In this document: piece after piece, positions 18,371-64,000 of the stretch
Layout: every line of letters starts with the position of its first letter
Position numbering within the stretch: position 1 is the first letter of the stretch
Assembly (NCBI RefSeq): GCF_006345805.1
Contig: NW_021834232.1
Span: 43,836-107,835, forward strand
Reading direction: 5' to 3'
Source of the DNA: Octopus sinensis
Taxonomy: Eukaryota
Length of the DNA stretch: 64,000 bases
Notes under the pieces: model-generated
The model's database searches: none
Told to the model about the DNA's origin: nothing
What the model saw: only the letters and a program-made list of their open reading frames with translations
Translations under genes and position numbers: made by a program

Positions 18371-18383
18371 ATTAAAAACTTAG

Positions 18384-32875: not shown

Positions 32876-33042
32876 TTACGCAAATTCTTCTGATTGTGCT
32901 GTCAATTGTGGTAAATTGTGTTAATGATTGTGCTAATGTGGTTTCAACTATCAAAGTGTTTTTCAAAATCTGTTAATTGCACAGTCTATTCAAGGTCGTG
33001 CAATCTGTAATTGCACATTCTGTCAAGTCAAATATGATAATA

Positions 33043-37989: not shown

Positions 37990-40900
37990 ATATAAATATA
38001 AAAGACGACTAAATAGTGAAAAACCCACGCCATGGCAAACCTAATCCTTTGTCATTGTTTCAATCTACTTTTCTCTTTTTTTTCCTCATGCCTCTCTGTT
38101 TCTCTAAAAAGTCGCTTTGTTGCACTTCGTGCATGCTTAACAACCCCAGGAAGAACGGCTCTCATTGCTCCTCCTGTGACCGTTTTTTCCATCTATCCTG
38201 TGCCGGAATACCTAAATTGGCCGCCGCTTCTCTGTCGAAGTGGTGTTGCCACTCTTGCCTTACCCAATCAAACTTGAGCCTGCACCCGGTTTTCTCATCC
38301 AAAGATTCACACTCTCAGCCCATCATTTCTTCCCCCTCGGTAAAAGATTTCCTCTTGGCGGTCGCACAAGCCAAGAGAAGCCGCTCGATCCCTATCAAAA
38401 TCCCGAAGGCCGCACGTATCCTTGCCGGAGACTCTTTATCAAAAGTCATCGACAAAGCCATTACTTCCAATGACCCAGCCTCCTGGAATCATCTTTTCTG
38501 CTTTGGCGTCATGGCTCTCGGCCTCCGCAGAGAGGATTCCCCACCAAAATCGATTTCTAACCGTTCCAAGCATAACATCTCAGCCTACCTAAATCGCCCT
38601 GATGATGACTTTCCTGCCTGGCTGGGCGAAACAAAGCCCCAGTCAACGCATAAAGTTAAAAAATCCAGTCAAAGTAGCAACGTAGACTCAGAAGCCTAAG
38701 ACATTTTGCGCCTGCGGAACAGGATCAACACTAAACTGATGGAGGGAAATGTTGCCAGCGCTGTCCGTGTTTTATCATCTGATGACTCAGTTCTTTCCAT
38801 TACACCAAGTGTCCTCGCTGAGCTTAATGCAAAACATCCGAGCCCCCCCGCGGACCTTCGCTCTACTACTCTAAATTCCGATTACCCCGCAACCTATGCC
38901 CCCAAAGAAGATGTTCTAGATGCTATTAATTCCCTTGCAACAGGCAGCTGCGGGGGCATCGACGGACTACGCCCAGGGCATGTGAAAGATCTACTCTCAA
39001 GCCACACCTGCGAGGCCGGCGCTCGGCTCCTCGTCTCCATAACTGCTCTGACAAACATGATCATCCAGGCACAAATCCCCGAGTACGCTCGGGACCTCCT
39101 ATTTTCTGCAAAAATCACCGCATTGAGGAAGAAGGAAGGCGGAATCCGCCCTATTGCTGTTGGTACATTTTTTCGCCGCCTAGCTTCCAAAGTAGCCTGT
39201 AGACAAGTTACCAAGTCTTTGGGTCAGGAACTACGCCCGTTTCAGTTGGGCGTCGGTGTCCGCGGCGGCTGTGAAGCTGCTGTCCATGCTGCGCAAGAAA
39301 GTTTATTTCCGCCTCGACGAAAGGCCGGATAACGCCTCTGTACTCGTGAAGCTAGACTTGACAAATGCCTTCAACAGTCTTCGTCGGGACTGTATTCTCG
39401 AAACTTGCTACCGCCGTGCTCCCTCAATGCCCGCTTGGTATCTATGGCTTACTCCAAGCCAAGCCTTCTTATTGCCGATGACCAAATCTACAACAGCAAC
39501 GGTGTTCAACAGGGCGACCCACTTGGCCCGTTGCTTTTTGCCCTGACGATCGATCCTGTTGTTCGGAACATCTCATCTCGTTTCAATGTATGGTACCTGG
39601 ACGACGCTACTATCGGAGGTCCGGTAGCTTCCGTCCTTAAAGATTTGGAAAATCTGATCCCCTCCCTTAATTCTCTTGGCCTATCCATCAATCCGCTCAA
39701 ATCCGAAATTGCCAATATTGGCTTTACCCCAGAAGATTTTACCTCTGTATTTAATACGTTCTCGAATGTCCTTCCAAATATCCGCAGGACCTTGATCGAA
39801 AATTTGAAAATCTTAGGGTCCCCTATATCCAATCTGGGTGTTGAATCATCCCTATATGCTAAAACATCCTCGCTAGTGGCAATTTCTAACAAACTAGCAA
39901 AAATCGATTCCCATTCCGGCCTGTTTTTCCTACGCAATTGTTTTGCAATTCCAAAGCTTCTATTTATCCTCAGAAGTGCCCCATGTTTCTTTAACCTGAG
40001 GGCTCTCGAATCATTTGATTTTTCGCTTAAATCCAGCTTGGAGTCCATTTGCAATATTACCCTCGATGAGATCGGTTGGCAACAGGCCACCCTTCCTATA
40101 AGCCATGGCGGTATTGGTATCCGATCATCTGTCGACCTTTCTATCCCGGCGTACTTATCTTCAGTTAATGCGACCAACGATCTGGTCCAGGAGATTCTCC
40201 AATCCGTAACCGAATCATCTATGGACACAGAGTCGGTCGCCGCAGAAAGTCGCTGGCAAGGGATGTCTCTGGAAATCCCGGAGAATACACACGCTCAAGG
40301 CCAATGGGACCGGATCCTCTGCGACCACAAGATAAACAGCCTCAAGCCGAAACTCAATCAACATCGCTTGGCTTGCCTATTGGCCGCCTCGCAACCATAT
40401 TCTGGTGCATGGCTTACAGCAATCCCTATGGCGTCAATCGGCACCTTAATGGACAACGACTGTGTAAGGATTTCCGTCTCTCTCCGCCTCGGACTTCCCA
40501 TTTGCAGAACACACCAGTGCCGCTGCGGTTTAAGAGTGGACCCATTTGGCCATCATCCCCTCTCCTGCTCACGTAGTGCCGGACGTTTCCCACGACACGC
40601 CGCCATCAACGACACCGTGAGCCGTGCCCTAACGAAGGCGGGGTTTCCTAATGAGCTCGAACCAGTCGGGCTCGACAGAGGCGACGGTAAGCGCCCGGAT
40701 GGCATGTCAATCTTCCCGTTTGAAAAGGGGAAATGCCTTATCTGGGACGCCACCTGTTCCGACACTTTCTCCGCCAAGAATCTAATTGCCTCCGCTGCGG
40801 AACCGGGCTCAGTTGCAAAGCAGGCGGAACTAACAAAACATAAGAAGTACCGGGTCCTGGCAAAGGATCACCAATTCACTGCAGTCGCGGTGGAAACCTC

Positions 40901-41100
40901 TGGAGTCATCGGCCCGCAGACGCTATCGTTTCTCCGCCGCCTTGGATCTAAGCTCGTGGTTGCCACGAAAGATCCCAACGAGTCGATCAGACTCTTTCAA
41001 GGGATCTCATTGGCCATCATGCGCGGAAATTGCCAGTCGATCCGCTGCGCATTTTAACTCTTTTCGCTTATCTTAATAATAAAAATTTTGAAAGCTAAAA
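37990..41100 (+). mobile_element. Near-full-length CRE-like RLE retrotransposon (PHD-RT-CCHC-RLE)
   Basis: N-terminal C4HC3 PHD (CTSC..CSSC..FHLSC..WCCHSC); RT (QQGDPLGP, WYLDD); CRCG..H..SC..RHAAIND; RPDG..WDAT..K..KY..VETSG. Three frameshifts; exact 5' end uncertain. Confidence 0.9.
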
Positions 41101-41445
41101 AAAAAATTAAAAAAATAGTTTTAGTAGTAAATAAATTTTTATATGTGAAAAGATTTGGTATTTGCTGATTACCGAACGTTTTTCCTTGATTTTCTGCGTG
41201 TTGAATGATAATGTCCGACCAATGAGATGATATTGACGACAAAACTGTGTCCGCAATAGACTACTATGTACTAATATTTATCATTTTTTATTTCTTTCAT
41301 AAGGAAGTAGTCATATCTTCTAATTATAAAAAGCCGCAAAATTAAGAAATATAACAGCCATAACGATATTCGGGAGTCAGACACTCCAGTTGTCGCAAAA
41401 TATCATCTTCAAACATAATATTTAGAAATTCAATATGCCTATGTG

Positions 41446-43660: not shown

Positions 43661-43679
43661 TTTTTATCTCCAAATTGCA

Positions 43680-45200
43680 GGAGGAGGCTGGGTTGTGAGT
43701 ACGAAAGGTGGACCAGAGGATAAGCGGAGGGGGCGAGAGAAAGGCAGGTCTCGAGCAAATGATCCCGTCTCACTGTGTTGAACGCATTTGATATGTCCAG
43801 TTTAACTAAAAGATATTCCAATGAAGAATCCAGAAGTTCTCTTACGGCATGGGCAGCCGATTCACACCCTCCACTGACGCCGACGCCCAATTGGACTGGC
43901 AAAAATTTCGGGACCAACTCGGGGATCACAACGTGGCAAACGAGCTTTCCGGCCAATCTGCGGAAAACATTACCCACGGCGATCTGCCTGACCCCGTTAT
44001 CTTTTTTACCCAAAGCAGTGAGATTAGCCGAGAAGAAATCGCCCGGGCAAAATCCGGTAAATTCCCACCGATAAAACGGTTACAGAGATTGGTGATAGAT
44101 TCCAAGAGGAGACGGCGCCTGCCTCAGCAGTAAGAGGTGAAGTCAAGTCTTTAATGTGTCCGGGCTTCAGCCCATCTATACCCCACTGCTGCTTGGGGAA
44201 AAACTTTTCAGTGCCTTCTCAACTGTGAAGCGGTAACCAGCAGTTGCGGAAGGGCGGTCGTATCGATAGCGGGTGTGGGTGCGGGAGTTTACTGGAAGAC
44301 TGGGGTGCTTGGATCTCAAATTGACGACGAAACGGAAGGAGATGGGGACAAAAGCCGGTTAGAGGAAGCAACAAGTCTGACAGCTCCACGGACATCGCCA
44401 TCCAACAGCTTGCTGTTCACCTTACGACGGAGGTAAATGCAATCGGAGGAAGTTTTAGTGTTAACCACAGAAGGGGCGACACATTGTGACAGTCAGAGTG
44501 GAGGGAATCGAACTGGGAGGGAAACAGAAGTACAATGATCGAATAGGGCGAGTTGCTGTTTAATAATCGATGCGGGAAAAAGTTTTTTAGACTCGCTGTC
44601 GGGCGGGAGGGTTGGATCCCAATACCGAAAACAGCAAACAAAAAGGAGTAACCAGTCAGACTGGTCATTAGATGACAAAGCGCGGTTTATAGCTGTGGAC
44701 AAAGAGAGAGCAGCTTGAATCCTCGCTGCCTTCGGTATCCGTGCCGGAATTTGGCGGTTACAGCGAGAAGAATAGATGAATCTTAAAGCATCTTCGGCTG
44801 ACGGAGATGGACTTTCAGCAGGGATTTCCGGCGGACTGTTGGCCGGGACCGGCCTGCAAGAACGACAAACAGGGCAGTTCCAGGTTATGAGAGAAGCTGA
44901 AACGCGCCTGGAAAGTCGAACACACGAAAGGTGGAAGAAACTGTTGCAGCCAGAACAGTATCTACCTTTCTTCCGATCGTTGCTAGTTTTGCACGAAAAG
45001 CAAATAGCCATCGTAGGAAAGAAATAGGATAGAAAGATGGAAAGGTATAAAAAAAAAGAAATAGAAAAGAAAGATGGACAGAAAGAAATGAAATAAAGAA
45101 ATGGAAAAGATAGAAGGACAAATAAAATGAAAGAAAAAGAAATGATAGATGGAGAGATAAAATGAAAGAAAAAGATAAGATAGGTTGACAAAAATACTGA
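43680..45200 (-). mobile_element. 5' half of a PHD-CRE element lacking its 3' part; near-identical to 58954-~60480
   Basis: Pyrimidine-rich 5' UTR; PHD CFSC..CSGC..FHLSC..WNCPVC; RT N-terminus; similarity to the other copy stops at CAGCCTCCTCCTG. Confidence 0.88.
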
Positions 45201-45474: not shown

Positions 45475-45477
<3 letters not shown>

Positions 45478-45514
<37 letters not shown>

Positions 45515-48171
45515 GATAGCTAAGTTAGTTAAAAGCCTCACGAGACACCCGAACCAGCCGCGCGAATGGCCGAAGACGTTCCCTCGGATCACAGCAATCG
45601 ACAGACGTTCCAGGAGCCAAGAAAACCTCTTGGATCGTGACTAGTCCTTGAAATCCGTCGACCGAGCGAGCGAAGGAAGCGGAGTGTCTTGGGACCGAAG
45701 ATCCCGGAGGACTCCAAGGCAATTGGAGTAAAGAGCAGCGAGTTGGACAGGTGGCCGTACTTGAGAATCTTCGCTCCTCGGCCTGCCTGGAAGCGTGCCC
45801 AGGATTGGCGGCGGACAGCGCGAGATTTCCCAGCGAGAACGTGTCCGAGCAGGTAGAATCCCAAATAGGGATTTCCCCTGCTCGTAGGGGAAGGTGGACA
45901 TGCCGTCAGGGCGTTTGCCATCCCCTCTATCCAATCCAACAGGTTCAAGGATAGACGGGATGCCTGCTGAGGCGAGGGCTCTCTGTACGACTGAGTTGAG
46001 TTCACTGTGACGGGGGGCACGACCGGCACTCCGCCGGCAAGCGAGGGGATGCAAACCGTACTCGTCAACAGTTCCCCACAACGGCATTTGTGCGACGGCA
46101 GATTTTCAGCCCGACACGGAGGGAGATTGCAATTCTCAGGCATTCCTTGTCCAACAGGTTCCCGATGGAAGGGAGAGGGAGAGCCTTAAACAGACACCGC
46201 TGCTTTCACAGCGACCTGCACGGAGGCAAGCGACACGGTGTTGATTGGGACAGGAAGCAGCCTTCGAAGATTGCCTGACAAGAGATTTCGTCCCATTGGC
46301 GCTGTACAGATTGAGAGTTGGGCAGCTTCGAACCAAACGAGCCTCCACCGACCACGGGCTGCAGAGTAAACTTCAGACAATTTCCGTTCGGGGAGGTTTC
46401 TAAGAACGATGTCTGAGAGAGTACGAGAAGCGTGATGAGCGGATAGGAATGCCGGGAGGGCAAGATCGGAATAGGATCTCAAGCCAAGGCCACCCAGCGC
46501 ACAGGCAGGGATGCCTGAGTCCAGCCTGGATCGTCGAAAGCCAGATTGCAAAGAGAGCTCGTACCGAGCCTGAGGATATTGTCAAGGTCGGAAAGAAGGT
46601 CGCCTCTTTGAAAGCAGGGTGCACATCTTAGGGTGTAAAGGATCTTAGGGACGGAGAAGTGGTTTCGGAGGAGGAAAAAAGCCACATGAGGCTCGATGAC
46701 TTTAAGCTTGTCGATCATTTTGGATAAGTGGGAAATTTTTCCAGCGAGTGAGCATTCGAGGGCAGAAGGCCCCATGGGGGCACCGAGGATCGTAAGATTT
46801 GATTTGTCCGTAATCGGACGTCTGAAAGAATGCCTCGGCACGTGGAAATTGAAGCAGTGAAGTCACTCGGATTTAAGGCAATGTTCACGATTTCGGATTA
46901 TTGGCGTTTATAGATAGGCCGATGTCCGAGAGGAAGGGAGGATAGAACGAAGGTCGTCGAAAACAGCGTCGGGGGGACCGCAATGGTTGCGTCATCCAGA
47001 TACCATATGTTAACTGGGGATCGAACAGAGTGAGCGATACTGTTAACGCCCAAGGCAAAAAGGACAGGACCCAGGGGATCTCCCTGTTGGACCCCGGTGG
47101 CCGAAGAGATGGGAACATCGTCGAACATGAGGATACTCGGAGAAGCGTATGAGAGATGTACAAGGGGATAAGCGAACGGAACCAGTTCGCGACAGCACTC
47201 CAGCAGGTGGTCACGTCTGATGGAGTTGAAGCGTTTGAGACGTCTAGTTTGACTATGATAGCCGACTGGGAAGATTCGATGAGTTCACGGAGAGAATGAA
47301 CGGCCGCTTCGCAGCCGTTTGGGACACCGACCCGAGTTGGGCGGGGAGAAACACTTGAGACAAAAAGGGGACAATTGCGTGGCACATAAGTTTGGCAGAG
47401 AGCCTCCGAAAGATATTCCCAACGGCAATGGTCTCACGCCGTTGTCCTTTTTCCAAGGGCAGTAAGGTTGGCGGAAAAGAAAATATCACGAGCAAAATCG
47501 GGGAGGGAGGGAACGGAGATGAAGCGGTTGCACAGGTTGGTAATTGAGCGTAGTAGTTTTCGACCAGCTTCGGCGGTAGTGGGAGACGTCAGGTCTTTCA
47601 GATGACCTGGTCTCAGACCATCTACACCACCACTGCTTCCAGGTGAAAAGTCCCTCAGGGCTTTCAGTACAAGAGTTTCCGAGACAGCAAAAGGATTGAG
47701 AGCGAGGGTGTCAGGGGACGGCTGAGGCCTGAAGTCGTTTGGCTGAGGGGGATGTTTTCCCTGAGGGAATTCAAAAACAGCAGGGGTCGTGGGCAAAAAG
47801 GGGACTTGTCGAGGCAACCAGCCTAACTGCACCACGAACGTCGCCGTCCAAGAGTTTACTATTAATCTTTCTGTTGAGGTAGTCGACGTCATTCGCGTGA
47901 GAGGACACATTATGGGATGGTGAACCAGAGGGAAATTCGGAGCTAGCGAGGTGGTCCCGCAGCCAGCGGATGGAAAAAGAGTTCTTATCGTACAAGGCCA
48001 TTTCTTGTTTGACGGTTGTAGCCAGCGAAATGGAGGAGGTTTTCACACGGGCTCTTAATGGGGCAAAACCGAGACCAAGAGGCGAAGCAAAACAGCTTAA
48101 GCCAATCGGAATGGCCATCAGATGCCAAAGCCTTATCGATTGCGGCGGACAGGGAGGAGGCTGCAAAGATA
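45478..48171 (-). mobile_element. 5'-truncated CRE-like RT-RLE element with poly(A)
   Basis: RT and RLE motifs across many frameshifts; long T-run at ~45477-45510; candidate 7-bp TSD CTATTCT (45471-45477, 48172-48178). Confidence 0.85.
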
Positions 48172-48229
48172 CTATTCTATCAATGAATTTTCAAGCAGAT
48201 AATGGTTTTTAAAAGCTTGTCTATAGTAA

Positions 48230-50609: not shown

Positions 50610-53300
50610 TAATATATTACGCAATTTATTACATAATCTCAAGTACCCTCGTATTGCTAAATCTAGGGAACTCCCCAAATTATATATTACGCAATTTATT
50701 ACATAATTTATTACATATTCTCAAGTACCCCAAAATTCACAAAACTAGGCACCTCCCTAAAATTGCATAATATATTACGCAATTTATTACGCAATCTATT
50801 ACATAATCTCAAGTATCCTCGTATCTTCACATCTTGGCACCTCACAAAATTGCATAATATATTACGCAATTTATTACATAATCTCAAGTACCCTCGTATT
50901 GCTAAATCTAGGGAACTCCCCAAATAGCATTATATATTACGCAATTTATTAGATAATTTATTACATAATCTCAAGTATTCCAAAATTCACAAAACTAGGC
51001 ACCTTCCTAAAATTGCATAATCTCACATATGCTCACATCTAGGGAGCTCCCAAAATTGCATAATATATTACGTAATTTATTGCATAATCTCAAGTACCCC
51101 CATATTCGAACAGTTAGGGACCTCCCAAAATTGCATAATATATTACGTAATTTATTGCATAATCTCAAGTACCCCCATATTCGAACATTTAGGGACCTCC
51201 CAAAATTGCATAATATATTACGTAATTTATTGCATAATCTCAAGTACCCCCATATTCGAACAGTTAGGGACCTCCCAAAATTGCATAATATATTACGTAA
51301 TTTATTGCATAATCTCAAGTACCCCCATATTCGAACATTTAGGGACCTCCCAAAATTGCATAATATATTATGTAATTTATTGCATAATCTCAAGTACCCC
51401 CATATTCGAACAGTTAGGAACCTCCCAAAATTGCATAATATATTACGTAATTTATTGCATAATCTCAAGTACCCCCATATTCGAACATTTAGGGACCTCC
51501 CAAAATTGCATAATATATTACGTAATTTATTGCATAATCTCAAGTACCCCCATATTCGAACATTTAGGGACCTCCCAAAATTGCATAATATATTACGTAA
51601 TTTATTGCATAATCTCAAGTACCCACATATTCGAACATTTAGGGACCTCCAAAATTGCATAATATATTACGTAATTTATTGCATAATCTCAAGTACCCCC
51701 ATATTCGAACATTTAGGGACCTCCCAAAATTGCATAATATATTACGTAATTTATTGCATAATCTCAAGTACCCCCATATTCGAACATTTAGGGACCTCCC
51801 AAAATTGCATAATATATTACGTAATTTATTGCATAATCTCAAGTACCCCCATATTCGAACAGTTAGGGACCTCCCAAAATTGCATAATATATTACGTAAT
51901 CTATTGCATAATCTCAAGTACCCCCATATTCGAACAGTTAGGGACCTCCCAAAATTGCATAATATATTACGTAATTTATTGCATAATCTCAAGTACCCCC
52001 ATATGCTCACATTTAGAGACCTCCCAAAATTGCATAATATATTACGTAATTTATTGCATAATCTCAAGTACCCACATATTCGAACAGTTAGGGACCTCCC
52101 AAAATTGCATAATATATTACGTAATTTATTGCATAATCTCAAGTACCCCCATATGTTCACATTTAGGGACTTCCCAAAATTGCATAATATATTACGTAAT
52201 TTATTGCATAATCTCAAGTACCCCCATATTCGAACAGTTAGGGACCTCCCAAAATTGCATAATATATTACGTAATTTATTGCATAATCTCAAGTACCCCC
52301 ATAATCGAACATTTAGGGACCTCCCAAAATTGCATAATATATTACGTAATTTATTGCATAATCTCAAGTACCCCCATATTCGAACATTTAGGGACCTCCC
52401 AAAATTGCATAATATATTACGTAATTTATTGCATAATCTCAAGTACCCCCATATTCGAACAGTAAGGACCTCCCAAAATTGCATAATATATTACGTAATT
52501 TAAGGCATAATCTCAAGTACTCCCATATTCGAACATTTAGGGACCTCCCAAAATTGCATAATATATTACGTAATTTATTGCATAATCTCAAGTACCCCCA
52601 TATTCGAACATTTAGGGACCTCCCAAAATTGCATAATATATTACGTAATTTATTGCATAATCTCAAGTACCCCCATATTCGAACATTTAGGGACCTCCCA
52701 AAATTGCATAATATATTACGTAATTTATTGCATAATCTCAAGTACCCCCATATTCGAACATTTAGGGACCTCCCAAAATTGCATAATATATTACGTAATT
52801 TATTGCATAATCTCAAGTACCCACATATTCGAACATTTAGGGACCTCCCAAAATTGCATAATATATTACGTAATTTATTGCATAATCTCAAGTACCCCCA
52901 TATTCGAACATTTAGGGACCTCCTAAAATTGCATAATATATTACGTAATTTATTGCATAATCTCAAGTACCCCCATAATCGAACAGTTAGGGACCTCCCA
53001 AAATTGCATAATATATTACGCAATTTATTGCATAATCTCAAGTACCCCCATATTCGAACAGTTAGGGACCTCCCAAAATTGCATAATATATTACGTAATT
53101 TATTGCATAATCTCAAGTACCCCCATATTCGAACATTTAGGGACCTCCTAAAATTGCATAATATATTACGTAATTTATTGCATAATCTCAAGTACCCCCA
53201 TAATCGAACAGTTAGGGATCTCCCAAAATTGCATAATATATTACGCAATTTATTGCATAATCTCAAGTACCCCCATATTCGAACAGTTAGGAACCTCCCA
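50610..53300. repeat. 75-bp satellite array (~30 homogeneous units from ~51050, diverged units to the left)
   Basis: Unit CCTCCCAAAATTGCATAATATATTACGTAATTTATTGCATAATCTCAAGTACCCCCATATTCGAACA(G/T)TTAGGGA; period read from TAATATATTA at 51061, 51136, 51211. Confidence 0.97.
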
Positions 53301-56090
53301 TCTTAAATCGAAAACGACGACTAAAAAAACGTTTAAAAATTTACTGGAACTGGTGGCGCTCGTTATGGAGGACAGTCACCAAAACTTGACGAGATGAGCG
53401 TTTTACGCTTATCAACGCCCGGTCAATTCGGAAACGGGCTACGGAGCTAACCTACTTGGTTAGCTCGGTAAACATGGACATATTGGTTGTTAATGAAACG
53501 AAGCTTAAGGGAAATCAGCATCATAAAATCCATGGTTTTCAGTCGATTGATATCCCATGGCGACCTGACGCAGTGGCTGGCACTGGGACATCCATATATT
53601 ATAAAGACAATCTGATGGTGAGGGACTTGAAAATCGTCGAACAAAATTTGTGCGAACTGATTACATTGAAACTACTAACATCCCTTGGATGGATATCTGT
53701 CGGAGCTATGTACTCCAAAGCAATGAAGATTATCAAAATCTTATTGAAGAATTTTTCCAGAACAATGATAGAGGAATTCTAATAGGAGACCTTAACGCAA
53801 AACACACATCGTACGGATGTGCCAACACAAATTCGGACGGTAATATACTCCTCAGATTATCGGAGAACTGCGGTTTTAGTGTTTTGACCTCACGAGAACC
53901 AAACCACTTCTCTTGTTATGGAGAGGATTGTATTGGAGTTTTCCTCGTATCGGCAGATCTTGTTCATCAATGCAGCATACCAAGGATTGAGATAAACATT
54001 GGTAGTGATCACCTACCTCAATCCTTGTGTATGCGAACATCATCTACGATATGCGAAGATCTGTTTATCGGATACGATACGTCTCGGACAATCTGGTCGG
54101 ACCTTGAGGTATCAATGAAAAAGCATTTGACACCGTATCCAATACAAAACATCTCTTCGAATATACAAATTGAAAAACTTGATAAAATTCTCAGAGAAGC
54201 TATACTGGACTTTCTCCGAAAATCTTCAATCAGGAAATACATCATGTCAAATACTAACAGAAAAACCCGGATTGACGAATCTTTGGGAAAACTTATAAAA
54301 TGGAAGGGAAACCTTGAAAAGAAGCTAAGACGATGCAGTGACCCCATAGATCGTATTCGTCTTCGGGATAAGATTCGTACCGTGAAAATAGAGATAAATG
54401 ATGTCGCAAAAAAACATTCAGACCTTGCTTGGAAGAGTCAATGCTCGAAACTGAATAAGAAAAACCCTCATTTTTGGAAGGTTTTCAACCTGAGTAATAT
54501 GGAGAACAAAGGAGAAGAGATCCGACTAAAAACAACTGAAGGAATAGATATCCCGCTCGATGAAGTTCCCTCACATCTGCGAAGTCAACTGGCAAAAGTT
54601 CAAGAGGTGGATCCGATCGACATGGTTCCGAAAGAAGTTATATGTGAGGCTCAGAGAAGTCTAAGAGCTAATTTGAGTCATACGGGACCACTGTGCAGAG
54701 ACATAACGTTGGAAGAAACGTATGCCGCAATTATGAGCTGCAAGAATAATGCACCCGGCCATGACTACATTCCAATTTCTGTATTCAAACATGCTCCAAA
54801 TATTCTCCTACGATACTTGACCGCACTATACAATGCAAGCTGGAGACTTGGATACGTACCGGACTCTTGGAAAAAGTCAATCGTACGTATGATTCCAAAG
54901 CCTGGAAAAATAAAGGACCATGCAGAGAACTATAGGCCGATAAGCCTAATATGCTCCGTCTCTAAAATTATGGAACGGATTGTCTTCACAAGACTTTCGA
55001 ACTTCGTAGAGGAATCAGGTGCACTTGCAGTAGAGCAGTGGGGATTCCGACGAAAAAGATCCTGTGGTGATTGTTTCGGAGAACTCGAGAAAGTCATCTC
55101 GCTTAGTCTTGCTAATAATACAGCGACTATTGCTATCTGCCTCGATGTCTCAAAAGCTTTTGACAGCGTATGGCACCTGGGCCTCTTGGAAAGTGTCGCC
55201 AAGAGCAAACCCGGGTCTAAAACGGTCAATTGGCTGAAGAGCTATTATCAATGAGAAGGTCATACATACGATGCGGAAACCGTTTGTCGGAATCTGTCGA
55301 TCTCAAAAGAGGGGTACCTCAAGGCTCGGTCTTGAGCCCCCTGCTTTTTAATATTTACGTTGCTGATATTCCAAAACCGAAAGATCCTACCAGTCGTCTC
55401 ATGATCTACGCGGACGACATATTAATAACGGATGCTTCGTGGAGAAAAGACATCTCGTGGAGGAAGTTAAAAGGATACGTGACAAGAGTGGAAGAATGGT
55501 GCATATCAAAAGGACTGACGCTTGCAAAAGAAAAGTGCACCGCCACTTGGATTGCAAAACAGGGAGCAAAACGAAAACCGCGAGAAACCTCTATGGGTTT
55601 ACAGTAACGGAGAACCTGAAATACCTTGGGGTTGAAGTTGGATCCAAGGGTTCTTACTTCAGATACATCGACTCGAGGAGAAGGAAATGCGCTCAAATTC
55701 TCAGGAGCATAATTCACTTCCACCTTTCCCCGGAAACGTTTTTATATGTTTATAAAACGTGCGTCGAACCATTGCTTACCTACGGGTTCGAGAGATGGTA
55801 TCCTACTGCTGAAAGGGATGGCATTATCGCTAAGCTCGAAAAGACGAGGCGATATGCCATCAAATTGGCAAATGGACTCCAGTTGGACCAACCCATCCCT
55901 CAAGTGATGGAAGACGCGACGGAAACGGTTGGAAGTGTTCTTTAGAGAGCCTTTCCTCTCGAATTAAATATTAAAAAAAAAAAAAAAAAGAGGGAAACAA
56001 CGAAGAAGAGGCATACGTTGTCTCATTAACTTTCTCCCTCTTTTTTCGGCTTTTCCGTTAATAAAAATTCATTCATTATTCATTCATTCA
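53301..56090 (+). mobile_element. 5'-truncated Jockey/I-group LINE inserted in the satellite
   Basis: ORF1 tail, then APE (INARS, NETK, GDLNA, SDHLP) and RT (QGSVLSPLLF, YADD) with frameshifts. AATAAA plus a (TTCA)n tail at 56068-56090; the satellite resumes at 56091. Confidence 0.92.
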
Positions 56091-56158: not shown

Positions 56159-58557
56159 TAACAATTATTAATTGGATATTAACAATTAGCGGAGCTAATA
56201 TAGCTCGTTAACGAAGCCAGTCGAAATTCCTGTAGTGTTCGGATAGTTCAGAATATACTGAACTGAATAATTCTTCTGCTGTATTCACATATATACATAA
56301 TTCTTCCGGTAGACTGATTTTCTGATCCTGTATATCTGAAGTAATTGCCCCATTTCCAATATCTAAAAGGATATTTGGAAATATGCTATTGACGCCTTGT
56401 AAATGTGCACGTACATTTACATCTAAGCTTACCTTTTTGACGTGTGTCCACAGGTATGACGATTGAGGCAGGCATTCAATTCATCCGCAGGCGTCCCTCT
56501 TTGAATAATTGGCAGAGTTTGTCTAAAATCACTGCCAATACAACTATTGCTCCATCAAACAACAGTTCCTCACAATTCTTGATATCTCTATATGTTCTGT
56601 CGACTGCTTCGAATGCGCCCTTATGAGCCATTGTGCATTCATCCCAAACAATTAATCTAGAATTCATAATTCTATAACCCGCAACTGAATTTTTTTCACA
56701 TTACAAACCGGTTCAGTATTGTAAGACAGGTTCAAGGGAATATTGAATGTTGAATGTGCTGTTCGACCTCCATCTAAAAGAGTTGCAGCAATTCCAGACG
56801 ATGCAACTGCTAATGCTATTTGATTGTCGCTTCTCACCTTTGCTAACAATAAATTTAGAAGAAAGGTCTTACCTGTATCACCTGGTGCATCAATAAAGAT
56901 GATAGAACCATTTTCTTCTTGGATGACTCGGTTAATTTCTCTGTATATTTCCAACTGCCCAGGTAATAAGCTTTGTTCTCTTTCTTCCACAATTTTTTGA
57001 AGTTCTTCTAAATTATAATGCTCATCTAAAGAATTTATATTATGAAGATCACTGATTGTTAAACCAAAATCACTTACACTCTTACCTACGACAGATATTA
57101 GCAATCTGTCTATCATGATTATGTCTATCATGCGGCTTCTATTAAAGTCTGATTCCAGTGGTTGTCATCCTCTAAAAGACCTAATTTAAAACAGGCTTCT
57201 CTGTATGTTTCGCAGAGTACACCATTGACAGTCCGCAGATCAGTGAATGATTCTGGCCCTCGAATGTTGTGCAAAAGTAACCTAACACAATAACATTCAA
57301 AATTATTTGGATGCACGGTATATACTCTACCCAATGCATCCGTACTTACAATACCGTTATGCCCGTTTACTGGCTCTCCTCTAATCCTTCTTTTAAATTT
57401 CTTTCCGGCCACTTCCCACGTATAATATCTAGGAACATCAACATAATAAATTGTCTTCGCAAATTCATCAGTCCGACATAATTCCATGTAGGCCATAAGC
57501 GTTGAATTTTTTGGATTCATAACTTGATTAGGGGCAGTTTCTTCTGTAAAATATATCCTTTGTCTATTTTCCAAGTGCACCGCTAAATGCATTACTAATG
57601 GATATCTTTCATGAATCGGATATCCGAAAATTCTCCATGTTCCTTCATTACTGCAGATGAATCGTCCATGCTGAAAAAAGCTTGGCTCGTCACGCTGCTC
57701 AATTGTAAAAATTGCTTGATCCGACCCTTTATTAATGTATTTACATACATATTTAATTGATCTAATAGAATTACAAAATTCAACATTAATATGAGCATCA
57801 AAAATCTTACATAACAGTGGATAATAAGGCACCACCCACCTGTTGTTAACTGTTATTTCATTTTCTTTTCCTTCTTTAACTTAAAAGATGATTCGGCATT
57901 CCAGAAGGATCAAAGGAGTTTAAAAAATCAATCCGGTTGAATTTTTAGAAAATAACAAAAAAAATAAAAAAAACAAATAAAAATAAATAATTTAAAAACA
58001 AAAAAAAACTTTAAAAAATTGTAAAATAGAATAAACAAAAAAAATCTATGCCGCCACGGCAAAACCTGTCTAATTTTTTTAACAGCCAATTAAGATAATG
58101 CTTAAGAGCCTTTATAGTCCGGAGATTTAGCTTAGTGACCTTGATTAGACAAACCACTGGCGGAAATGGGGCAGGCGCAGATGCAGCAGGCAGAGTAGCA
58201 GCAGCCAAAAAAGCGACACACAAAAAAGATTTAATTAATTACCTTAAGCTGACCGTTTTTATCTTCAGCTTCGTTTTTCCTCCTTCGGTTATCTATTTAA
58301 AAATTAATTTTTTTGAATAATAAAAAATATTAGGAAAAAAGAGGCATACAGAAAATAAATTCTATCTTTACGAAAAACTTCTTTCTTAAGGTCGTCTTCC
58401 TCCTTCGGTTATCTATTGAAAAAATTATTTTTAAATAATAAAAAAGTTTAGGAAAAGAGGCATACCGAAAATAAATTCTATCTTTACGAAAAACTTAACT
58501 AAATAGTTAATATTTTTACGCAAATTCTTCTGATTGTGCTGTCAATTGTGGTAAATT

Positions 58558-61500
58558 TTTTTTTTTTTTTTTTTTTTTTTTTATATGTAATTAACAAATA
58601 GTTATTAACTAACTAAATTCCCGCATCGTAAATGGAAACACAGTTTCCACGTACTATGGCCAAGGAAATCCTTTCGAAAAGCCACTTGGACTCGCGTGGG
58701 TCTCCCCGTTTATGGGAGATCATGCGGCAAGCTTTTTTAGAAAGGAAAGAGACTTTTCGCCGATGACGCCGGAAGTCTCGACGGCGATGGAGTGAACAGA
58801 TACCGTTCAGAGAGCTCCTTGTACTTTCAATCTTCATCTTCTCGGTTTTGCGAGAGACTGAGCCAGGCTCGACAGCTGAAGAAGGAAGGTTGAGCTCCGA
58901 GAAAGTGTCTGAACACTTTTGCACGTTGCACGTTGTTGTTGTGGTGCACTTTTTCAGTATATTTGTCAACCTATCTTATCTTTTTCTTTCATTTTATCTC
59001 TCCATCTATCATTTCTTTTTCTTTCATTTTATTTGTCCTTCTATCTCTTCCATTTCTTTATTTCATTTCTTTCTGTCCTTCTTTCTTCTTTCTTTTCTAT
59101 TTCTTTTTTATACATTTCCATCTTTCTTTTCTATTTCTTTCCTACGATGGCTATTTGCTCTTCGTGCAAAACTAACAACGATCGGAAGAAAGGTAGATAC
59201 TGTTCTGGCTGCAACAGTTTCTTCCACCTTTCGTGTGTTCGACTTTCCAGGCACGTTTCAGCTTCTCTCATAACCTGGAACTGCCCTGTTTGTCGTTCTT
59301 GCAGGCCGTTCCCGGCCAACAGTCCGCCGGAAATCCCTGCTGAAAGTCCATCTCCGTCAGCCGAAGATGCTTTAAGATTCATCTATTCTTCTCGCTGTAA
59401 CCGCAAAATTCCGGCACGGATACACGAAGGCAGCGAGGATTCAAGCTGCTCTCTCTTTGTCCACAGCTATAAACCGCGCTTTGTCATCTAATGACCAGTC
59501 TGACTGGTTACTCCTTTTGGTTTTGCTGTTTTCGGTATTGGGATCCAACCCTCCCGGCCCGACAGCGAGTCTAAAAAACTTTCTCCCGCATCGATTATTA
59601 AACAGCAACTCGCCCTATTCGATCATTGTACTTCTCTGTTTCCCTCCCAGTTCGATTCCCTCCACTCTGACTCTCACAAATGTGTCGCCCCTTCTGTGGT
59701 TAACACTAAAACTTCCTCCGATTGCATTTACCTCCGTCGTAAGGTGAACAGCAAGCTGTTGGACGGCGACGTCCGCGGAGCTGTCAGACTTGTTGCCTCC
59801 TCTAACCGGCTTTTGTCCACATCTCCCTCCGCATTGTCTAATTTGAGATCCAAGCACCCCAGTCCTCCAGTAAACTCCCGCACCCAACCCGCTGTCGATA
59901 CGACCGCCCTTCCGCAACTGCTGGTTACCGCTTCACAGGTTGAGAAGGCACTGAAAAGTTTTTCCCCAAGCAGCAGTGGGGGTATAGATGGGCTGAAGCC
60001 CGGACACATTAAAGACTTGACTTCACCTCTTACTGCTGAGGCAGGTCGTCTCCTCTTGGAATCTATCACCAATCTCTGTAACCGTCTTATCGGTGGGAAT
60101 TTACCGGATTTTGCCCGGGCGATTTTCTTCTCGGCTAATCTCACTGCTTTGGGCAAAAAAGATAACGGGGTCAGGCCGATCGCCGTGGGTAATGTTTTCC
60201 GCAGATTGGCCGGAAAGCTCGTTTGCCACGTTGTGATCCCCGAGTTGGTTCCGAAATTTTTGCCAGTCCAATTGGCGTCGGCGTCAGTGGAGGGTGTGAA
60301 TCGGCTGCCCATGCCGTAAGAGAACTTATGGATTCTTCATTGGAATATCTTTTAGTTAAACTGGACATATCAAATGCGTTTAACACAGTGAGACGGGATC
60401 ATTTGCTCGAGACCTGCCTTTCTCTCGCCCCCTCCGCTTATCCTCTAGTCCACCTTTCGTACTCACAACCCAGCCTCCTCCTGTTTGGCGATTCCTTTAT
60501 CGTCTCATCGACCGGAGTGCAACAGGAGATCCCCTGGGGCCTTTCCTATTTGCTATGTGTGTCAACTCCGTCGCTCATTCTGTCCGCTCTCCGGTAAATA
60601 TCTGGTACTTGGACGACGCGACGATTTGTGGACCTCCCCGCTCTGTCTTAGACGACCTGCGGAGCATTATCCCGGCCCTTTCATCCATCGGTCTGGAGAT
60701 AAACTCAAGCAAGTCCGAAGTCCTAAACCTGAATATTCCTTCCGATTTTTTGCCGAAACTCTGGACGCCCTGGAACCTATTCTAAAAGGCGCGCGGGTAT
60801 CAGAAACAAAGGACCTTGTAATCCTTGGTTCGCCAATTGGTCACGAGGCCCTCTCACAAACGCTCATCGCCAAGGCAAGCAATCTGTCAAACATGATCGA
60901 ACGGCTTTCCCTCATTGATGCCACGTCGGGTTCTTTCTTCTGCGTAACTATTTCTCAACTCCGAGGCTTTTGTACACCCTAAGGAGTTCTCCTTGTTTTC
61001 GCATGCCTAATCTGTTATCCGATATCGATTCTATCTTGAAGTCTGGAGCCGAGTATCTGTGTAACAATCCATTTCGACGCTCTGGGGTGGCTTCAATCTT
61101 CCCTGCCTGTTAATCTCGGGGGGATTGGCCTTCGTTCGCCCGTTTATCTGGCTCTTCCTGCCTTCCTCTCGTCCCTGGCATCATCCCGTGCCCTCACTGA
61201 CATCGTTCTCAGAAACCTTCCCGAACGAAAAATGTCAGTTGATCACGTGGCCGCTCTGGACCTTTGGGATTCATTGTACAACAAAAGACCCAGTGACCCG
61301 TGTATCCAAGCTCAATGGGATGCCATTTCTTGTGAAGCTCTTGACGTACATCTACGCAAAAATTTCGATCAGCACAGACTTGCATGTCTCCGCGCAGGCT
61401 GCTGCACAGGGAGTGGGGCCTGGCTGGATGCTCTCCCTGTCCCTTCCACCGGTAACCTACTAGACAAAGATTGCCTACGAATTGGTTTATCATTGCGTCT

Positions 61501-61773
61501 TGGATTGGAAATCTGCGAAATACACAAATGTCGTTGTGGTGCTGTCATTGACCGTTTTGGTCTACATCCCCTTTCTGTCGTCGCAGTGCAGGGCGCGCAC
61601 CACGCCATGCAGCACTTAACGACGTTATTCAGAGGGGGCTCACGGCCGCTGGGATTCCATCAATCCTCGAACCCGTCGGGCTTGCGAGGGGAGACGGAAA
61701 AAGACCCGACGGCCTATCGACTTTCCCGTTTGAGTTCGGCAAGTCTCTGTTATGGGATGCGACGTGTTCAGAC
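58558..61773 (-). mobile_element. PHD-CRE-like element with 5' inversion (3' end minus at 58558-58916; body plus at 58954-61773)
   Basis: 13-bp TSD ATTGTGGTAAATT at 58545-58557 and 61774-61786, single copy at 32905-32917. Poly(T) at 58556-58582. Both pieces share GTGTTCAGAC at the TCSD codons. Confidence 0.9.
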
Positions 61774-61911
61774 ATTGTGGTAAATTGTGTTAATGATTGT
61801 GCTAATGTGGTTTCAACTATCAAAGTGTTTTTCAAAATCTGTTAATTGCACACTCTATTCAAGGTCGTGCAATCTGTAATTGCACATTCTGTCAAGTCAA
61901 ATATGATAATA

Positions 61912-63183
61912 TGTCACATGGGCGACTATGTCGCTATGGGCAGCCAGTCCTTTTACGTGTTTCTATGGAAACCGCAGAAAAGGTATTAAATATTGAATAT
62001 AGCAATTTATATATGGAGGAGTGTAGATTAATCAATTATTCTAATTTAAAATTACATTTGAATTATCTTTTAAAAATGGCTTACCCAAAACTATATTAAT
62101 TTTAACAGCGTGGTTACTCACACTTTGTGATGTCTGGGTTTAATGGTTACGTCAGAAATATTAACGAATACAATCAAATTAAGGAAGGTTAATCGGGATA
62201 TCCCGGAGGATATGAATGCTCGAAGCAAACACCGGTTGGCCAAAAAGGCTTTCAATTTTTGTCAAAAATGTCTGAAGAATCGTCAGCAGAATCATCATTT
62301 AATTTCGAGTTAGGGTTTGGGTTAAGGTTAGGGTTAGATTTTGAATATTTATTTTGTCACTTGCCAACGTTAGGGTTTGGGTTAAGGTTAGGGTTAGATT
62401 TTGAATATTTATTTTGTCACTTGCCAACGTTAGGGTTTGGGTTAAGGTTAGGGTTAGATTTTGAATATTTATTTTGTCACTTGCCAACGTTAGGGTTTGG
62501 GTTAAGGTTAGGGTTAGATTTTGAATATTTATGTTGTCACTTGCCAACGTTAGGGTTTGGGTTATGGTTAGATTTTAAATATTTATGTTGTCACTTGCCA
62601 ACGTTAAGGTTTGGGTTAAGGTTAGGGTTAAGGTTAGGGTTAGATTTTGAATATTTATGTTGTCACTTGCCAACGTTAGGGTTTGGGTTAGGGTTAGATT
62701 TTAAATATTTATGTTGTCACTTGCCAACGTTAGGGTTTGGGTTAAGGTTAGGGTTAGATTTTGAATATATTTATGTTGTCACTTGCCAACGTTAGGGTTT
62801 GGGTTAAGGTTAGGGTTAGATTTTGAATATATTTATGTTGTCACTTGCCAACGTTAGGGTTTGGGTTAAGGTTAGAGTTAAAGTTGTTACAAACTTTGCA
62901 AAAAATTTGATGTAAATTATAATTTGCTAATGTTGCAATTTATATTATCAAAAATAAAAATAAATCACATTATAATTTGCTAATGTTGTAAATAATTTTA
63001 CTATTTTAAAGCAAGCATGGTTCAAATATAAAACATCATTTTCTCAAAAATTTAAAGTTCAATCATTAGTTCGTATATTTTGCCTTTATATTAGTTGGCC
63101 TTTTAGTAAATATTTGCTATGTAGTTGCCATGGAAACACGTAAAGGCCAGGTTGCCCATAGGGGTCTGATCACCCATGTGACA
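61912..63183. mobile_element. Ginger2-type MITE with a ~10-unit, ~60-bp telomere-like array (62310-62880)
   Basis: TIR TGTCACATGGG / CCCATGTGACA; TSD TAATA. Unit TTAGGGTTTGGGTTAAGGTTAGGGTTAGATTTTGAATATTTAT(T/G)TTGTCACTTGCCAACG. Confidence 0.88.
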
Positions 63184-63415
63184 TAATAGCTTTAATTTGA
63201 TTCATGGTCGATAATGATAGATGCATTTAATTTAAAGAGAAAAACATAGGATGAATTGAATTTCTTTATCGCGAATAATTGGGAGTTCATCATTGTTAAT
63301 ATTCTGCTGTCGTTTTCATCAAGGATATTCTTAATACGTGAGATTTTTGCCTCGAAGGTTTTAATGGACCTTATCATGAATGTCGAGGACATTAACGTTG
63401 TTCATTTTAATCAAA

Positions 63416-64000
63416 TGCCCCATGTTTCTTTAACCTGAGGGCTCTCGAATCATTTGATTTTTCGCTTAAATCTAGCTTGGAGTCCATTTGCAATATTACC
63501 CTTGATGAGATCGGTTGGCAACAGGCCACCCTTCCTATAAGCCATGGCGGTATTGGTATCCGATCATCTGTCGACCTTTCTATCCCGGCGTACTTATCTT
63601 CAGTTAATGCGACCAACGATCTGGTCCAGGAGATTCTCCAATCCGTAACCGAATCATCTATGGACACAGAGTCGGTTCGCCGCAGAAAGTCGCTGGCAAG
63701 GGATTGTCTTGGAAATCCCGGAGAATACACACGCTCAAGGCCAATGGGACCGGATCCTCTGCGACCACAAGATGAATAGCCTCAAGCCGAAACTCAATTA
63801 ACATCGCTTGGCTTGCTTATGGGCCGCCTCGCAACCATATTCTGGTGCATGGCTTACAGCAATCCCTATGGCGTCAATCGGCACCTTAATGGACAACGAC
63901 TGTGTAAGGATTTCCGTCTCTCTCCGCCTCGGACTTCCCATTTGCAGAACACACCAGTGCCGCTGCGGTTAAGAGTGGACCCATTTGGCCATCATCCCCT
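63416..64000 (+). mobile_element. 5'-truncated CRE-like element (duplicate of 33764), cut by the window end
   Basis: Same 5' junction (CAAA|TGCCCCATG) and sequence as 33764 onward. Confidence 0.9.

What the first reader, a model, noticed from the sequence alone, without database searches (positions are those of the whole stretch)
58545..61786. Twin-priming-type 5' inversion in an RLE (CRE-like) retrotransposon, with the empty site in the same window
Seen: TSD, then poly(T), then the 3' 360 bp of the element on minus, a junction, the 5' UTR-to-WDATCSD body (2.8 kb) on plus, then TSD. The two pieces overlap by 10 bp (GTGTTCAGAC) exactly where the RLE frame continues. The duplicate segment has ATTGTGGTAAATT only once (32905-32917), which confirms the 13-bp TSD. 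Known: this geometry is the twin-priming signature described for mammalian L1 (APE-type). Inference: an RLE-type TPRT enzyme can use the second-strand nick as an internal primer, here copying back to the 5' end. I do not recall this being described for CRE/R2-like elements, but did not search.
Basis: partly seen in the sequence, partly recalled or inferred. Interest (0 to 1): 0.78.

Follow-up and report, generated by a model that had tools for sequence, protein, structure and literature searches.

The report
Head-inverted R2-like retrotransposon insertion
A 3.1-kb jumping gene of the R2-like class (reverse transcriptase plus restriction-type nuclease) was inserted with its front 2.8 kb flipped relative to its tail, the 'twin priming' footprint so far documented almost only for mammalian L1; the unoccupied site survives in a duplicate 26 kb away.

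Summary
ATTGTGGTAAATT flanks the insert (58545-58557, 61774-61786). It occurs once at the paralogous empty site (32905-32917) of a segmental duplication with 98.5% identity. Between the copies lie T25, 334 bp of element 3' end on the minus strand, a 37-nt filler, then 2820 bp on the plus strand running from the true 5' terminus to ...WDATCSD. The two pieces share exactly 10 nt (GTGTTCAGAC). An intact paralogue in the window and 10 aligned homologues from public databases read straight across that point. The predicted C-terminal fold of the intact paralogue matches only R2 endonuclease-bearing proteins, so the nuclease is restriction-like. The N-terminus is a PHD finger and targets vary, so 'CRE-like' is not shown. 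A 13-bp duplication and a 10-bp overlap sit in the middle of the ranges reported for 5'-inverted human L1. Twin priming in a single insertion event is the best reading (about 0.65). Departures from L1 are 1 nt of microhomology at the internal start, a complete 5' end and a 37-nt filler. No second case turned up among about 54 relatives. I found no natural case reported for this element class. Interest is moderate, because this is one locus and no reads were available.

The parts
58545..58557 (.). Left copy of the 13-bp target-site duplication, ATTGTGGTAAATT. Its 3' end on the plus strand (..AAATT) is the inferred first-strand primer.
58558..58582 (-). Poly(A) tail of the element, 25 nt, read as T25 on the plus strand.
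58583..58916 (-). Non-inverted 3' piece of 334 bp. It holds the 3' UTR and the C-terminal third of the nuclease domain (CSDTFSELN...IYDAGI*, with about 3 frameshifts). It ends internally at point Z, 58916.
58907..58916 (-). Minus-strand copy of the 10-nt overlap GTGTTCAGAC (codons for CSD).
58917..58953 (.). Filler of 37 nt at the inversion junction: TTTT GCACGTT GCACGTT GTT GTT GTG GTGCAC TTTT. It is bounded by a 7-bp direct repeat CACTTTT (58914-58920 and 58947-58953). No convincing template was found.
58954..59146 (+). Complete CT-rich 5' UTR, starting at the family's 5' terminus TCAGTAT.
   Evidence: Same start as copy 2 at 45200.
59147..61773 (+). Inverted 5' piece, coding part. PHD finger at about 59156-59293, reverse transcriptase at about 59726-61100, CCHC at about 61529-61580, then the nuclease N-terminal part ending ...[15 protein letters not shown] at point X, 61773. 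At least 6 frameshifts.
61764..61773 (+). Plus-strand copy of the 10-nt overlap. It abuts the duplication directly, with no tail and 1 nt of microhomology (A at 61774).
61774..61786 (.). Right copy of the 13-bp target-site duplication. Its complement (..CCACAAT-3' on the minus strand) is the inferred second primer.
32905..32917 (.). Empty site in the paralogous segment, holding a single ATTGTGGTAAATT.
43678..45200 (-). Second copy of the same family (96% identical). It covers element positions 1 to about 1530 and fixes the 5' terminus. It is 3'-truncated.
38016..41113 (+). Uninverted, nearly intact paralogue (family C) with PHD, reverse transcriptase and restriction-like nuclease in one frame, interrupted by two in-frame stops. 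Used as the collinearity yardstick and for the structure model.
45477..48177 (-). 5'-truncated paralogue (family B) with an A35 tail and an 11/12-bp duplication AGATA(T)CTATTC. It reads straight across the X/Z point.

Best explanation
This is one retrotransposition event of a roughly 3.15-kb non-LTR element carrying a PHD finger, a reverse transcriptase and a restriction-like nuclease. It happened after the local segmental duplication and was resolved by twin priming.

Shown directly:
- The target was opened with a 13-bp stagger that leaves 3' overhangs.
- The insert consists of two complementary parts of one element in opposite orientations, sharing 10 nt.

Inferred sequence of events:
1. The plus strand was nicked after ..GGTAAATT (32917/32918). 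Its 3' end primed on the poly(A) tail. This first cDNA ran 334 nt into the RNA and stopped at Z.
2. The minus strand was nicked 13 bp away before the first cDNA was finished. Its free 3' end (..CCACAAT) was used as a primer inside the same RNA at X, with at most 1 nt of pairing. This second cDNA ran 2.8 kb to the RNA 5' terminus.
3. The first polymerase displaced about 10 nt of the second product before stalling, which gives the overlap.
4. The two cDNA 3' ends were joined through 37 extra nucleotides, and the gaps were filled.

The most likely enzyme is the element's own protein.
For: - Duplication and empty site.
- The tail lies only on the 3' piece, and the 5' piece abuts the duplication without a tail.
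- Collinearity at protein level: the intact paralogue's residues 380-453 map to the end of the 5' piece, and residues 451-546 map to the start of the 3' piece.
- Ten aligned homologues from public databases read WDATC(S/T)DTFS without a break, and the best database hits cover 98-100% of the stitched query.
- Families B and C are contiguous at DNA level across the point. They differ from GTGTTCAGAC at 3 and 2 of 10 positions, so the shared 10-mer is specific to this family.
- The 3' piece is no more than 51% identical in protein to any other family in the window.
- The 5' terminus is shared with copy 2.
- Restriction-like nuclease: AlphaFold2 pLDDT 93, and the top 7 Foldseek hits in the PDB are all R2 proteins with E from 1.6e-5 to 4.5e-4.
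- Uninverted relatives in the window have the same insertion style, with A tails and duplications of 10 and 11/12 bp.
- The numbers fit the L1 yardstick. In 5'-inverted human L1 the cDNA overlap has median 12 bp (quartiles 4-17) and the duplication median 13 bp (PMC12016303).
- Inversions are associated with 10-20-bp overhangs (PMC4245944).
- R2 proteins can nick the second strand without making cDNA, and can start on template that lacks pairing to the primer (PMC12180492).
Against: - This is a single locus, and no reads were available to confirm the three junctions.
- No other copy of this family carries the 3' region, so collinearity rests on paralogues, on homologues and on the 10-nt identity.
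- L1 inversions nearly always show 2-5 bp of microhomology at the internal start, and usually microhomology rather than filler at the inversion junction (PMC2912911). Here there is 1 nt and a 37-nt filler.
- No inverted copy was found among about 54 informative relatives, and only 1 of about 10 copies in the window is inverted.
- One in-vitro model for R2 has second-strand cleavage follow a template jump of the cDNA to the upstream target DNA (PMC6895275).
- APE-type elements with poly(A) tails share the window, so mobilisation in trans is not excluded.
Confidence: 0.65

Rival explanations
1. The same twin-priming event, but catalysed in trans by an APE-type LINE machinery acting on the polyadenylated RNA of this element, in the way processed pseudogenes are made. 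It would then say nothing about restriction-like enzymes.
For: - The window holds APE-type LINEs with poly(A) tails: 14177-17984 on minus with a T24 tail, and about 53460-55990 on plus with an A18 tail.
- The inverted copy has a pure A25 tail.
- L1-made processed pseudogenes show 5' inversion at 13% (PMC12016303).
Against: - Uninverted copies of three related families in the window show the same style, with A tails and duplications of 10-13 bp. That style is therefore the family's own.
- There is only 1 nt of microhomology at the internal start, unlike APE/L1 inversions.
- The first nick at AATT/GT is not an L1-type TTTT/A site.
- LINE proteins generally prefer their own RNA in cis (established knowledge).
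Confidence: 0.1
2. An ordinary full-length insertion on the minus strand, followed by a later DNA inversion of its 5' 2.8 kb.
For: The final order of the pieces would be the same.
Against: - One breakpoint would have to fall exactly at the boundary between element and duplication.
- The other breakpoint would have to create a 10-nt duplication and a 37-nt insertion.
- No pre-existing inverted repeat is there to mediate it.
Confidence: 0.05
3. Two cDNAs made from two different RNA molecules at the two ends of one break, or two separate insertions at one site.
For: L1-induced breaks can be extended from both ends on different mRNAs (bioRxiv 10.1101/2024.12.14.628481).
Against: - X and Z coincide to within 10 nt in 3.1 kb, which is under 1% by chance.
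- There is a single duplication.
- The 5' piece has no tail of its own.
Confidence: 0.04
4. An assembly artefact, that is, a chimeric join inside a repeat.
For: - The region is rich in repeats.
- The assembly carries many 1-nt indels: 11 gap events in 2.4 kb between the paralogous segments, 8 of them homopolymer length changes.
Against: An artefact would not place a tail-less internal point of the element precisely against a second copy of a 13-bp target sequence that is single at the empty site.
Confidence: 0.04
5. Snap-back synthesis, in which the cDNA 3' end folds back and copies the cDNA itself, as proposed for R2-protein transgene insertions.
For: Target-to-antisense junctions made by R2 proteins in human cells were interpreted this way (PMC11371274).
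Against: Snap-back duplicates sequence as a long inverted repeat. Here the two pieces are complementary parts of the element and share only 10 nt.
Confidence: 0.02
6. Ordinary retrotransposition of an RNA transcribed from a master copy that was already inverted.
For: None specific.
Against: The new copy would have to start exactly at the old internal point X with no transduced flank. The sequence next to X is the local target duplication.
Confidence: 0.02

Closest known systems
5'-inverted L1 insertions made by twin priming (Ostertag and Kazazian 2001; surveyed in PMC2912911 and PMC12016303)
   Same: - A single duplication of 10-20 bp flanks the insert.
- The poly(A) piece is not inverted.
- The inverted 5' piece abuts the other duplication copy.
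- The end of one cDNA and the start of the other lie within 20 bp, often overlapping (median 12 bp). Here the values are 13 bp and 10 bp.
   Different: - The enzyme has a restriction-like nuclease, not an APE nuclease, and there is no ORF1.
- The inverted piece reaches the true 5' terminus, so nothing is lost.
- There is 1 nt rather than 2-5 nt of microhomology at the internal start.
- A 37-nt filler replaces microhomology at the inversion junction.
- It looks rare: 1 of about 10 copies in the window and 0 of about 54 relatives, against 18-31% for L1.
Target-to-antisense 5' junctions and excluded 'inverted transgene insertions' seen with avian R2 proteins in human cells (PRINT, PMC11371274)
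   Same: A restriction-like-nuclease enzyme, with the upstream target fused to template sequence in antisense orientation.
   Different: - Those are engineered templates in a foreign host, read as short junction reads.
- They were interpreted as snap-back, which duplicates sequence.
- The case here is a natural, complete, two-junction structure with an empty site, and it is not duplicative.
R2, NeSL/Utopia, Hero, R4 and CRE non-LTR retrotransposons (the group with a restriction-like nuclease)
   Same: - Single-ORF layout with the reverse transcriptase followed by CCHC and a PD-(D/E)xK nuclease.
- The fold matches the C-terminal region of R2Bm and R2Tg.
   Different: - The N-terminus is a PHD finger, not C2H2/Myb.
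- Targets are dispersed, not rDNA or spliced-leader genes.
- There is a 10-13-bp duplication, whereas R2 nicks the second strand 2 bp upstream of the first nick (PMC12180492).
- It has a pure poly(A) tail.
- The clade was not assigned here.
The single 5'-inverted Nimb-2_DR insert in chicken DT40 cells (PMC4245944)
   Same: A rare 5' inversion outside L1, in an element that makes duplications of about 12 bp.
   Different: Nimb is an APE-type LINE, and that event came from an experimental assay.

Membership tests
Twin-priming-type 5'-inverted LINE insertion | One target-site duplication flanks the whole two-piece insert, and an empty site is known | tested here: met
   A 13-bp ATTGTGGTAAATT lies on both sides and is single at 32905-32917 in the paralogue, whose alignment to the filled copy is 98.5% identical.
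Twin-priming-type 5'-inverted LINE insertion | The poly(A)-bearing 3' piece lies next to one duplication copy; the 5' piece lies in opposite orientation and abuts the other copy without a tail | tested here: met
   T25 at 58558-58582 followed by the minus-strand 3' piece. The plus-strand piece ends at 61773 directly against the duplication.
Twin-priming-type 5'-inverted LINE insertion | The two pieces are adjoining parts of one element, with a small gap or overlap at the point facing the duplication | tested here: met
   The overlap is 10 nt, or 3 codons. Residues 380-453 and 451-546 of an intact paralogue map to the two pieces. Homologues and families B and C are contiguous across the point. 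There is no second copy of this family's own 3' region to compare.
Twin-priming-type 5'-inverted LINE insertion | Microhomology between the second primer and the RNA at the internal start (2-5 bp in about 70% of L1 cases) | tested here: inconclusive
   Only 1 nt (A at 61774) is shared, which is what chance gives (yardstick).
Twin-priming-type 5'-inverted LINE insertion | The two cDNA ends are joined by short microhomology at the inversion junction | tested here: not met
   A 37-nt filler sits there instead, bounded by a 7-bp direct repeat CACTTTT. This is a frequent feature of L1 cases rather than a strict requirement.
Twin-priming-type 5'-inverted LINE insertion | Two priming events on one RNA are observed directly | not testable with these tools
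   This needs biochemistry or a cell-based assay.
Non-LTR retrotransposon with a restriction-like nuclease (R2 supergroup) | Reverse transcriptase domain | tested here: met
   RVT_1 scores E 1e-8 in family C and gives weak pieces in the frameshifted copy. tblastn maps the whole reverse transcriptase onto the 5' piece.
Non-LTR retrotransposon with a restriction-like nuclease (R2 supergroup) | C-terminal CCHC motif plus a PD-(D/E)xK nuclease like that of R2 | tested here: met
   - The motifs C-x-C..H..C and RPDG..WD..E..K are conserved: invariant across 11 sequences and at least 90% conserved across 40.
- The AlphaFold2 model has pLDDT 93.
- The top 7 Foldseek hits in the PDB are all R2 proteins (E 1.6e-5 to 4.5e-4), followed by weak hits to Holliday-junction resolvases.
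- Sequence-only searches against the PDB were not significant.
- The model was built on family C, not on the inverted copy itself.
Non-LTR retrotransposon with a restriction-like nuclease (R2 supergroup) | No APE-type nuclease domain | tested here: met
   There is no Exo_endo_phos hit in any piece of family A or C, whereas the APE LINEs in the same window do hit.
CRE clade | Site-specific insertion in spliced-leader RNA genes | tested here: not met
   Three copies with a defined duplication sit in unrelated sequences: ATTGTGGTAAATT, AGATATCTATTC and ATCAATTCCA.
CRE clade | Placement inside the clade by reverse-transcriptase phylogeny | not tested
   No reference set such as Repbase was on hand. 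Named relatives are only unannotated proteins of crustaceans and a cuttlefish.
R2 clade proper | Insertion at the 28S rDNA site, with N-terminal zinc-finger and Myb DNA-binding domains | tested here: not met
   No rRNA match anywhere in the window. The N-terminus is a PHD finger (E 1.4e-5).

The most novel reading that the evidence does not exclude
Twin priming may be a general property of target-primed reverse transcription rather than a peculiarity of L1, its APE nuclease or mammalian hosts. In restriction-like-nuclease elements that cut with a 10-13-bp stagger, the second strand would be nicked before the first cDNA is complete. Its 3' end would be handed to a reverse transcriptase that can start inside the RNA with essentially no base pairing. 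If so, such inverted copies are natural footprints of the order of events in R2-like integration. Some 'snap-back' junctions seen with R2-based gene-insertion tools would then really be twin priming.
Probability: 0.3. Interest if true: 0.6.

Novelty: new member of a known kind. Interest (0 to 1): 0.45.

Why it matters
How the second half of non-LTR integration works is still debated for R2-like elements. The open points are when the second strand is cut and what its 3' end primes on (PMC6895275, PMC12180492, PMC13000458). These enzymes are now being developed for gene insertion.

Experimental work has suggested that 5' inversion depends on L1 and on the host (PMC4245944). A clean natural inversion in an element with a restriction-like nuclease, with its empty site preserved, argues two things. 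The second nick can come before the first cDNA is finished. The nick can also prime on RNA with almost no pairing. It also gives a way to tell twin priming apart from snap-back: the two pieces are complementary parts rather than duplicated ones.

The weight is limited, because this is one locus, from an unknown host, without read support.

Tried and rejected
- Sequence-only searches of the nuclease region against the PDB. A single protein gave only weak R2 hits (E 0.03). A profile gave nothing meaningful. The fold comparison was needed instead.
- Template for the 37-nt filler. The best candidates are a 10-mer at 61533-61542 and a 7-mer in the duplication. Both are at chance level.
- Shared target between the two copies of the family. 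I thought the flanks looked alike, but BLAST found no similarity.
- Possible second examples inside the window.
  - 13138-13305 (minus) next to 13397-13759 (plus) are two separate truncated copies. The plus copy has its own 10-bp duplication.
  - 18010-18372 (minus) and 20856-22815 (plus) are separated by a LIM-homeobox-like sequence and are independent.
- Search for inverted relatives elsewhere.
  - Viral contigs: nothing.
  - Metagenome contigs: 80 loci, of which 32 are uninverted to the N-terminus, 13 are plainly 5'-truncated and 35 are cut by contig ends. L015 is two convergent copies.
  - Nine loci from long ENA contigs: all uninverted. L087 looked promising, but its upstream minus-strand reverse transcriptase is unrelated.
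- Same-species copies or host identity. The best protein hits are only 51-66% identical, so there is no family consensus and no host name.
- Rfam and tRNA scans: nothing, and no 5' ribozyme.
- RNA structure around X and Z as a cause of stalling or priming: not special, z = +0.25.
- Literature. No paper in the held library reports a natural 5' inversion for an element with a restriction-like nuclease, and none pairs a PHD finger with this nuclease type. Ostertag and Kazazian 2001 is not held, so I used later surveys for its numbers.

Full report
**1. Observation**

- ATTGTGGTAAATT occurs three times in the window: 58545-58557, 61774-61786 and 32905-32917.
- A self-comparison shows a segmental duplication. 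30527-32917 aligns with 56183-58557 at 98.5%. 32905-33075 aligns with 61774-61944 at 99.4%. 33075-34348 aligns with 62720-64000.
- The first two alignments overlap by exactly the 13-mer. So 32905-32917 is the unoccupied site, and the insert created a 13-bp target-site duplication.
- The flanks differ by only 10 substitutions and 11 small indels in 2.4 kb. The insertion is therefore younger than a recent duplication.

**2. Anatomy of the insert, left to right on the plus strand**

| Coordinates | Feature |
|---|---|
| 58558-58582 | T25, the poly(A) tail of the minus-strand piece |
| 58583-58916 | 334 bp of element 3' end on the minus strand: 3' UTR and the last ~100 codons |
| 58917-58953 | 37-nt filler |
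| 58954-61773 | 2820 bp on the plus strand: 193-nt CT-rich 5' UTR, ATG at 59147, PHD finger, reverse transcriptase, CCHC motif, and the nuclease up to ...LLWDATCSD |

- A second copy of the family lies at 45200..43678 on the minus strand and is 96% identical. It begins at the same TCAGTAT. So 58954 is the family's real 5' terminus, and the inverted piece is complete at its 5' end.
- GTGTTCAGAC closes the plus piece (61764-61773). Its reverse complement closes the minus piece (58907-58916). These are its only two occurrences in the window.
- The A at 61774 could belong to the element or to the duplication, which is 1 nt of microhomology.

**3. Are the two pieces one element?**

No other copy of this family carries the 3' region, so I used relatives.

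- An almost intact paralogue lies in the window at 38016-41113 on plus (family C). It has one reading frame with two in-frame stops. Its residues 380-453 map to the end of the 5' piece, and residues 451-546 map to the start of the 3' piece. That is a three-codon overlap.
- A conceptual translation stitched across the point hits 136 database proteins. The best are 66% identical and cover 98-100% of the query.
- All ten homologues that I aligned read WDATC(S/T)DTFS without interruption.
- Families B (45523-48166 on minus) and C are contiguous at DNA level across the point. They differ from the 10-mer at 3 and 2 positions respectively.
- The 3' piece is no more than 51% identical in protein to any other family in the window. 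Its nearest relatives are the same proteins as for the 5' piece.
- I conclude that the pieces are adjoining parts of one roughly 3.15-kb element, with 10 nt present twice.

**4. What kind of element is it?**

- Pfam finds a PHD finger (E 1.4e-5), reverse transcriptase pieces, and no APE nuclease.
- The C-terminal domain has an invariant C-x-C..H..C and RPDG..WD..E..K.
- Sequence searches against solved structures were not significant.
- An AlphaFold2 model of the family C domain has pLDDT 93.4. Its seven best Foldseek hits in the PDB are all R2 proteins, with E from 1.6e-5 to 4.5e-4. Weak hits to Holliday-junction resolvases follow.
- The nuclease is therefore restriction-like.
- The label 'CRE-like' is not supported. 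The N-terminus is a PHD finger. The targets of three copies are unrelated. No rDNA is present. I leave the clade unassigned.
- Uninverted relatives in the window end in A tails and carry duplications of 10 bp (ATCAATTCCA, 13383 and 13817) and 11/12 bp (family B). The 13-bp stagger and the tail are therefore the group's normal style.

**5. Mechanism**

- The duplication implies 3' overhangs of 13 nt.
- The plus-strand end ..AAATT-3' carries the T-run, so it primed on the poly(A) tail.
- The minus-strand end ..CCACAAT-3' is joined directly to the antisense of ...GTGTTCAGAC. So it primed inside the RNA at X and was extended 2.8 kb to the RNA 5' end.
- The first cDNA stops 10 nt beyond X.
- This is the twin-priming product (model summarised in PMC2912911).
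- The numbers match human L1. In 5'-inverted L1 the two cDNAs overlap by a median of 12 bp (quartiles 4-17), and duplications have a median of 13 bp (PMC12016303). Inversions go with overhangs of 10-20 nt (PMC4245944).

There are three departures from L1:

1. Only 1 nt of pairing at the internal start. About 95% of L1 inversions have microhomology there.
2. The inverted piece reaches the true 5' terminus.
3. A 37-nt internally repetitive filler sits at the inversion junction, bounded by the direct repeat CACTTTT, with no identifiable template.

Little need for pairing fits what is reported for R2 proteins (PMC12180492).

**6. Rivals**

- Snap-back synthesis was proposed for antisense junctions made by R2 proteins in human cells (PMC11371274). 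It would duplicate sequence. Here the pieces are complementary.
- A later DNA inversion needs one breakpoint exactly at the duplication boundary, plus a 10-nt duplication and a filler.
- Two independent RNAs would not end within 10 nt of each other.
- A rearranged master copy would have to start exactly at X with no transduced flank.
- An assembly artefact would not recreate a precise duplication.
- The rival I cannot exclude is mobilisation in trans by an APE-type LINE. Such elements with poly(A) tails are present. The shared insertion style of the related uninverted copies argues against it.

**7. How common, and how new?**

- In the window, 1 of about 10 insertions of this element group is inverted.
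- Among relatives fetched from public assemblies, none of 45 informative metagenome loci and none of 9 loci from long contigs is inverted. Short assembled contigs are a poor place to find such junctions.
- In the held literature, twin priming is almost entirely a mammalian L1 topic.
[quoted passage not shown] The snap-back interpretation above is the other mention.
- I found no natural genomic case.

**8. Verdict**

It is a further member of a known kind of structure, in a class of element where it bears on an open question. It rests on one locus without read support. Interest 0.45.

Noticed in passing
window 43678-45200 (minus): The second copy of the same family has the complete 5' end but stops at about element position 1530 (...CAGCCTCCTCCTG|CAATTTGG). 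It has no tail and no recognisable duplication. Truncation at the 3' end is unusual for a non-LTR element. It could be a deletion, or the leftover of a second-end cDNA joined elsewhere.
   Followed up: partly
window 38016-41113 (plus): A nearly intact relative (family C) has PHD finger, reverse transcriptase and restriction-like nuclease in one frame of about 1010 codons. Only two in-frame stops interrupt it (38697-38699 and 39330-39332). It has a short A-rich tail. It is a possible recently active element.
   Followed up: partly
window 30527-34348 and 56183-64000: A segmental duplication with 98.5% identity carries Helitron-type PIF1 helicase reading frames (29952-31866 and 56664-57835) and a 5'-truncated family C copy (33762-34841 and 63414-64000). 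The second segment also has an expanded ~60-bp tandem repeat (62309-62880), compared with a single stretch at 33075-33229 in the first.
   Followed up: partly
window 50610-53300: A tandem array about 2.7 kb long with a 75-bp period, open in several frames on both strands.
   Followed up: no
window 17984-17995: A truncated relative (18010-18372 on minus) ends in a 10-nt A tail. An APE-type LINE (ORF1 with a CCHC knuckle at 16808-17977, ORF2 at 14182-16722, T24 tail at 14153-14176) starts 7 nt after it. This looks like insertion of the APE element into the other element's poly(A) tail.
   Followed up: no
window 18278-19072 and 19930-20020: One uninterrupted frame holds a LIM domain and a homeodomain. 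Part of the homeodomain sequence is repeated about 1 kb downstream. It could be a retrocopy or a fragment of a host LIM-homeobox gene.
   Followed up: no
window 58914-58953: The filler is internally repetitive (GCACGTT twice, GTT three times) and bounded by the direct repeat CACTTTT. A join without the filler would read ..GAACACTTTT|TCAGTAT... This pattern resembles repeated abortive synthesis and re-annealing during end joining.
   Followed up: partly
window 5231-6091 (minus) and 41982-42389 (minus): Integrase-core (rve) reading frames from LTR-type or related elements. The whole window is largely made of transposable elements.
   Followed up: no
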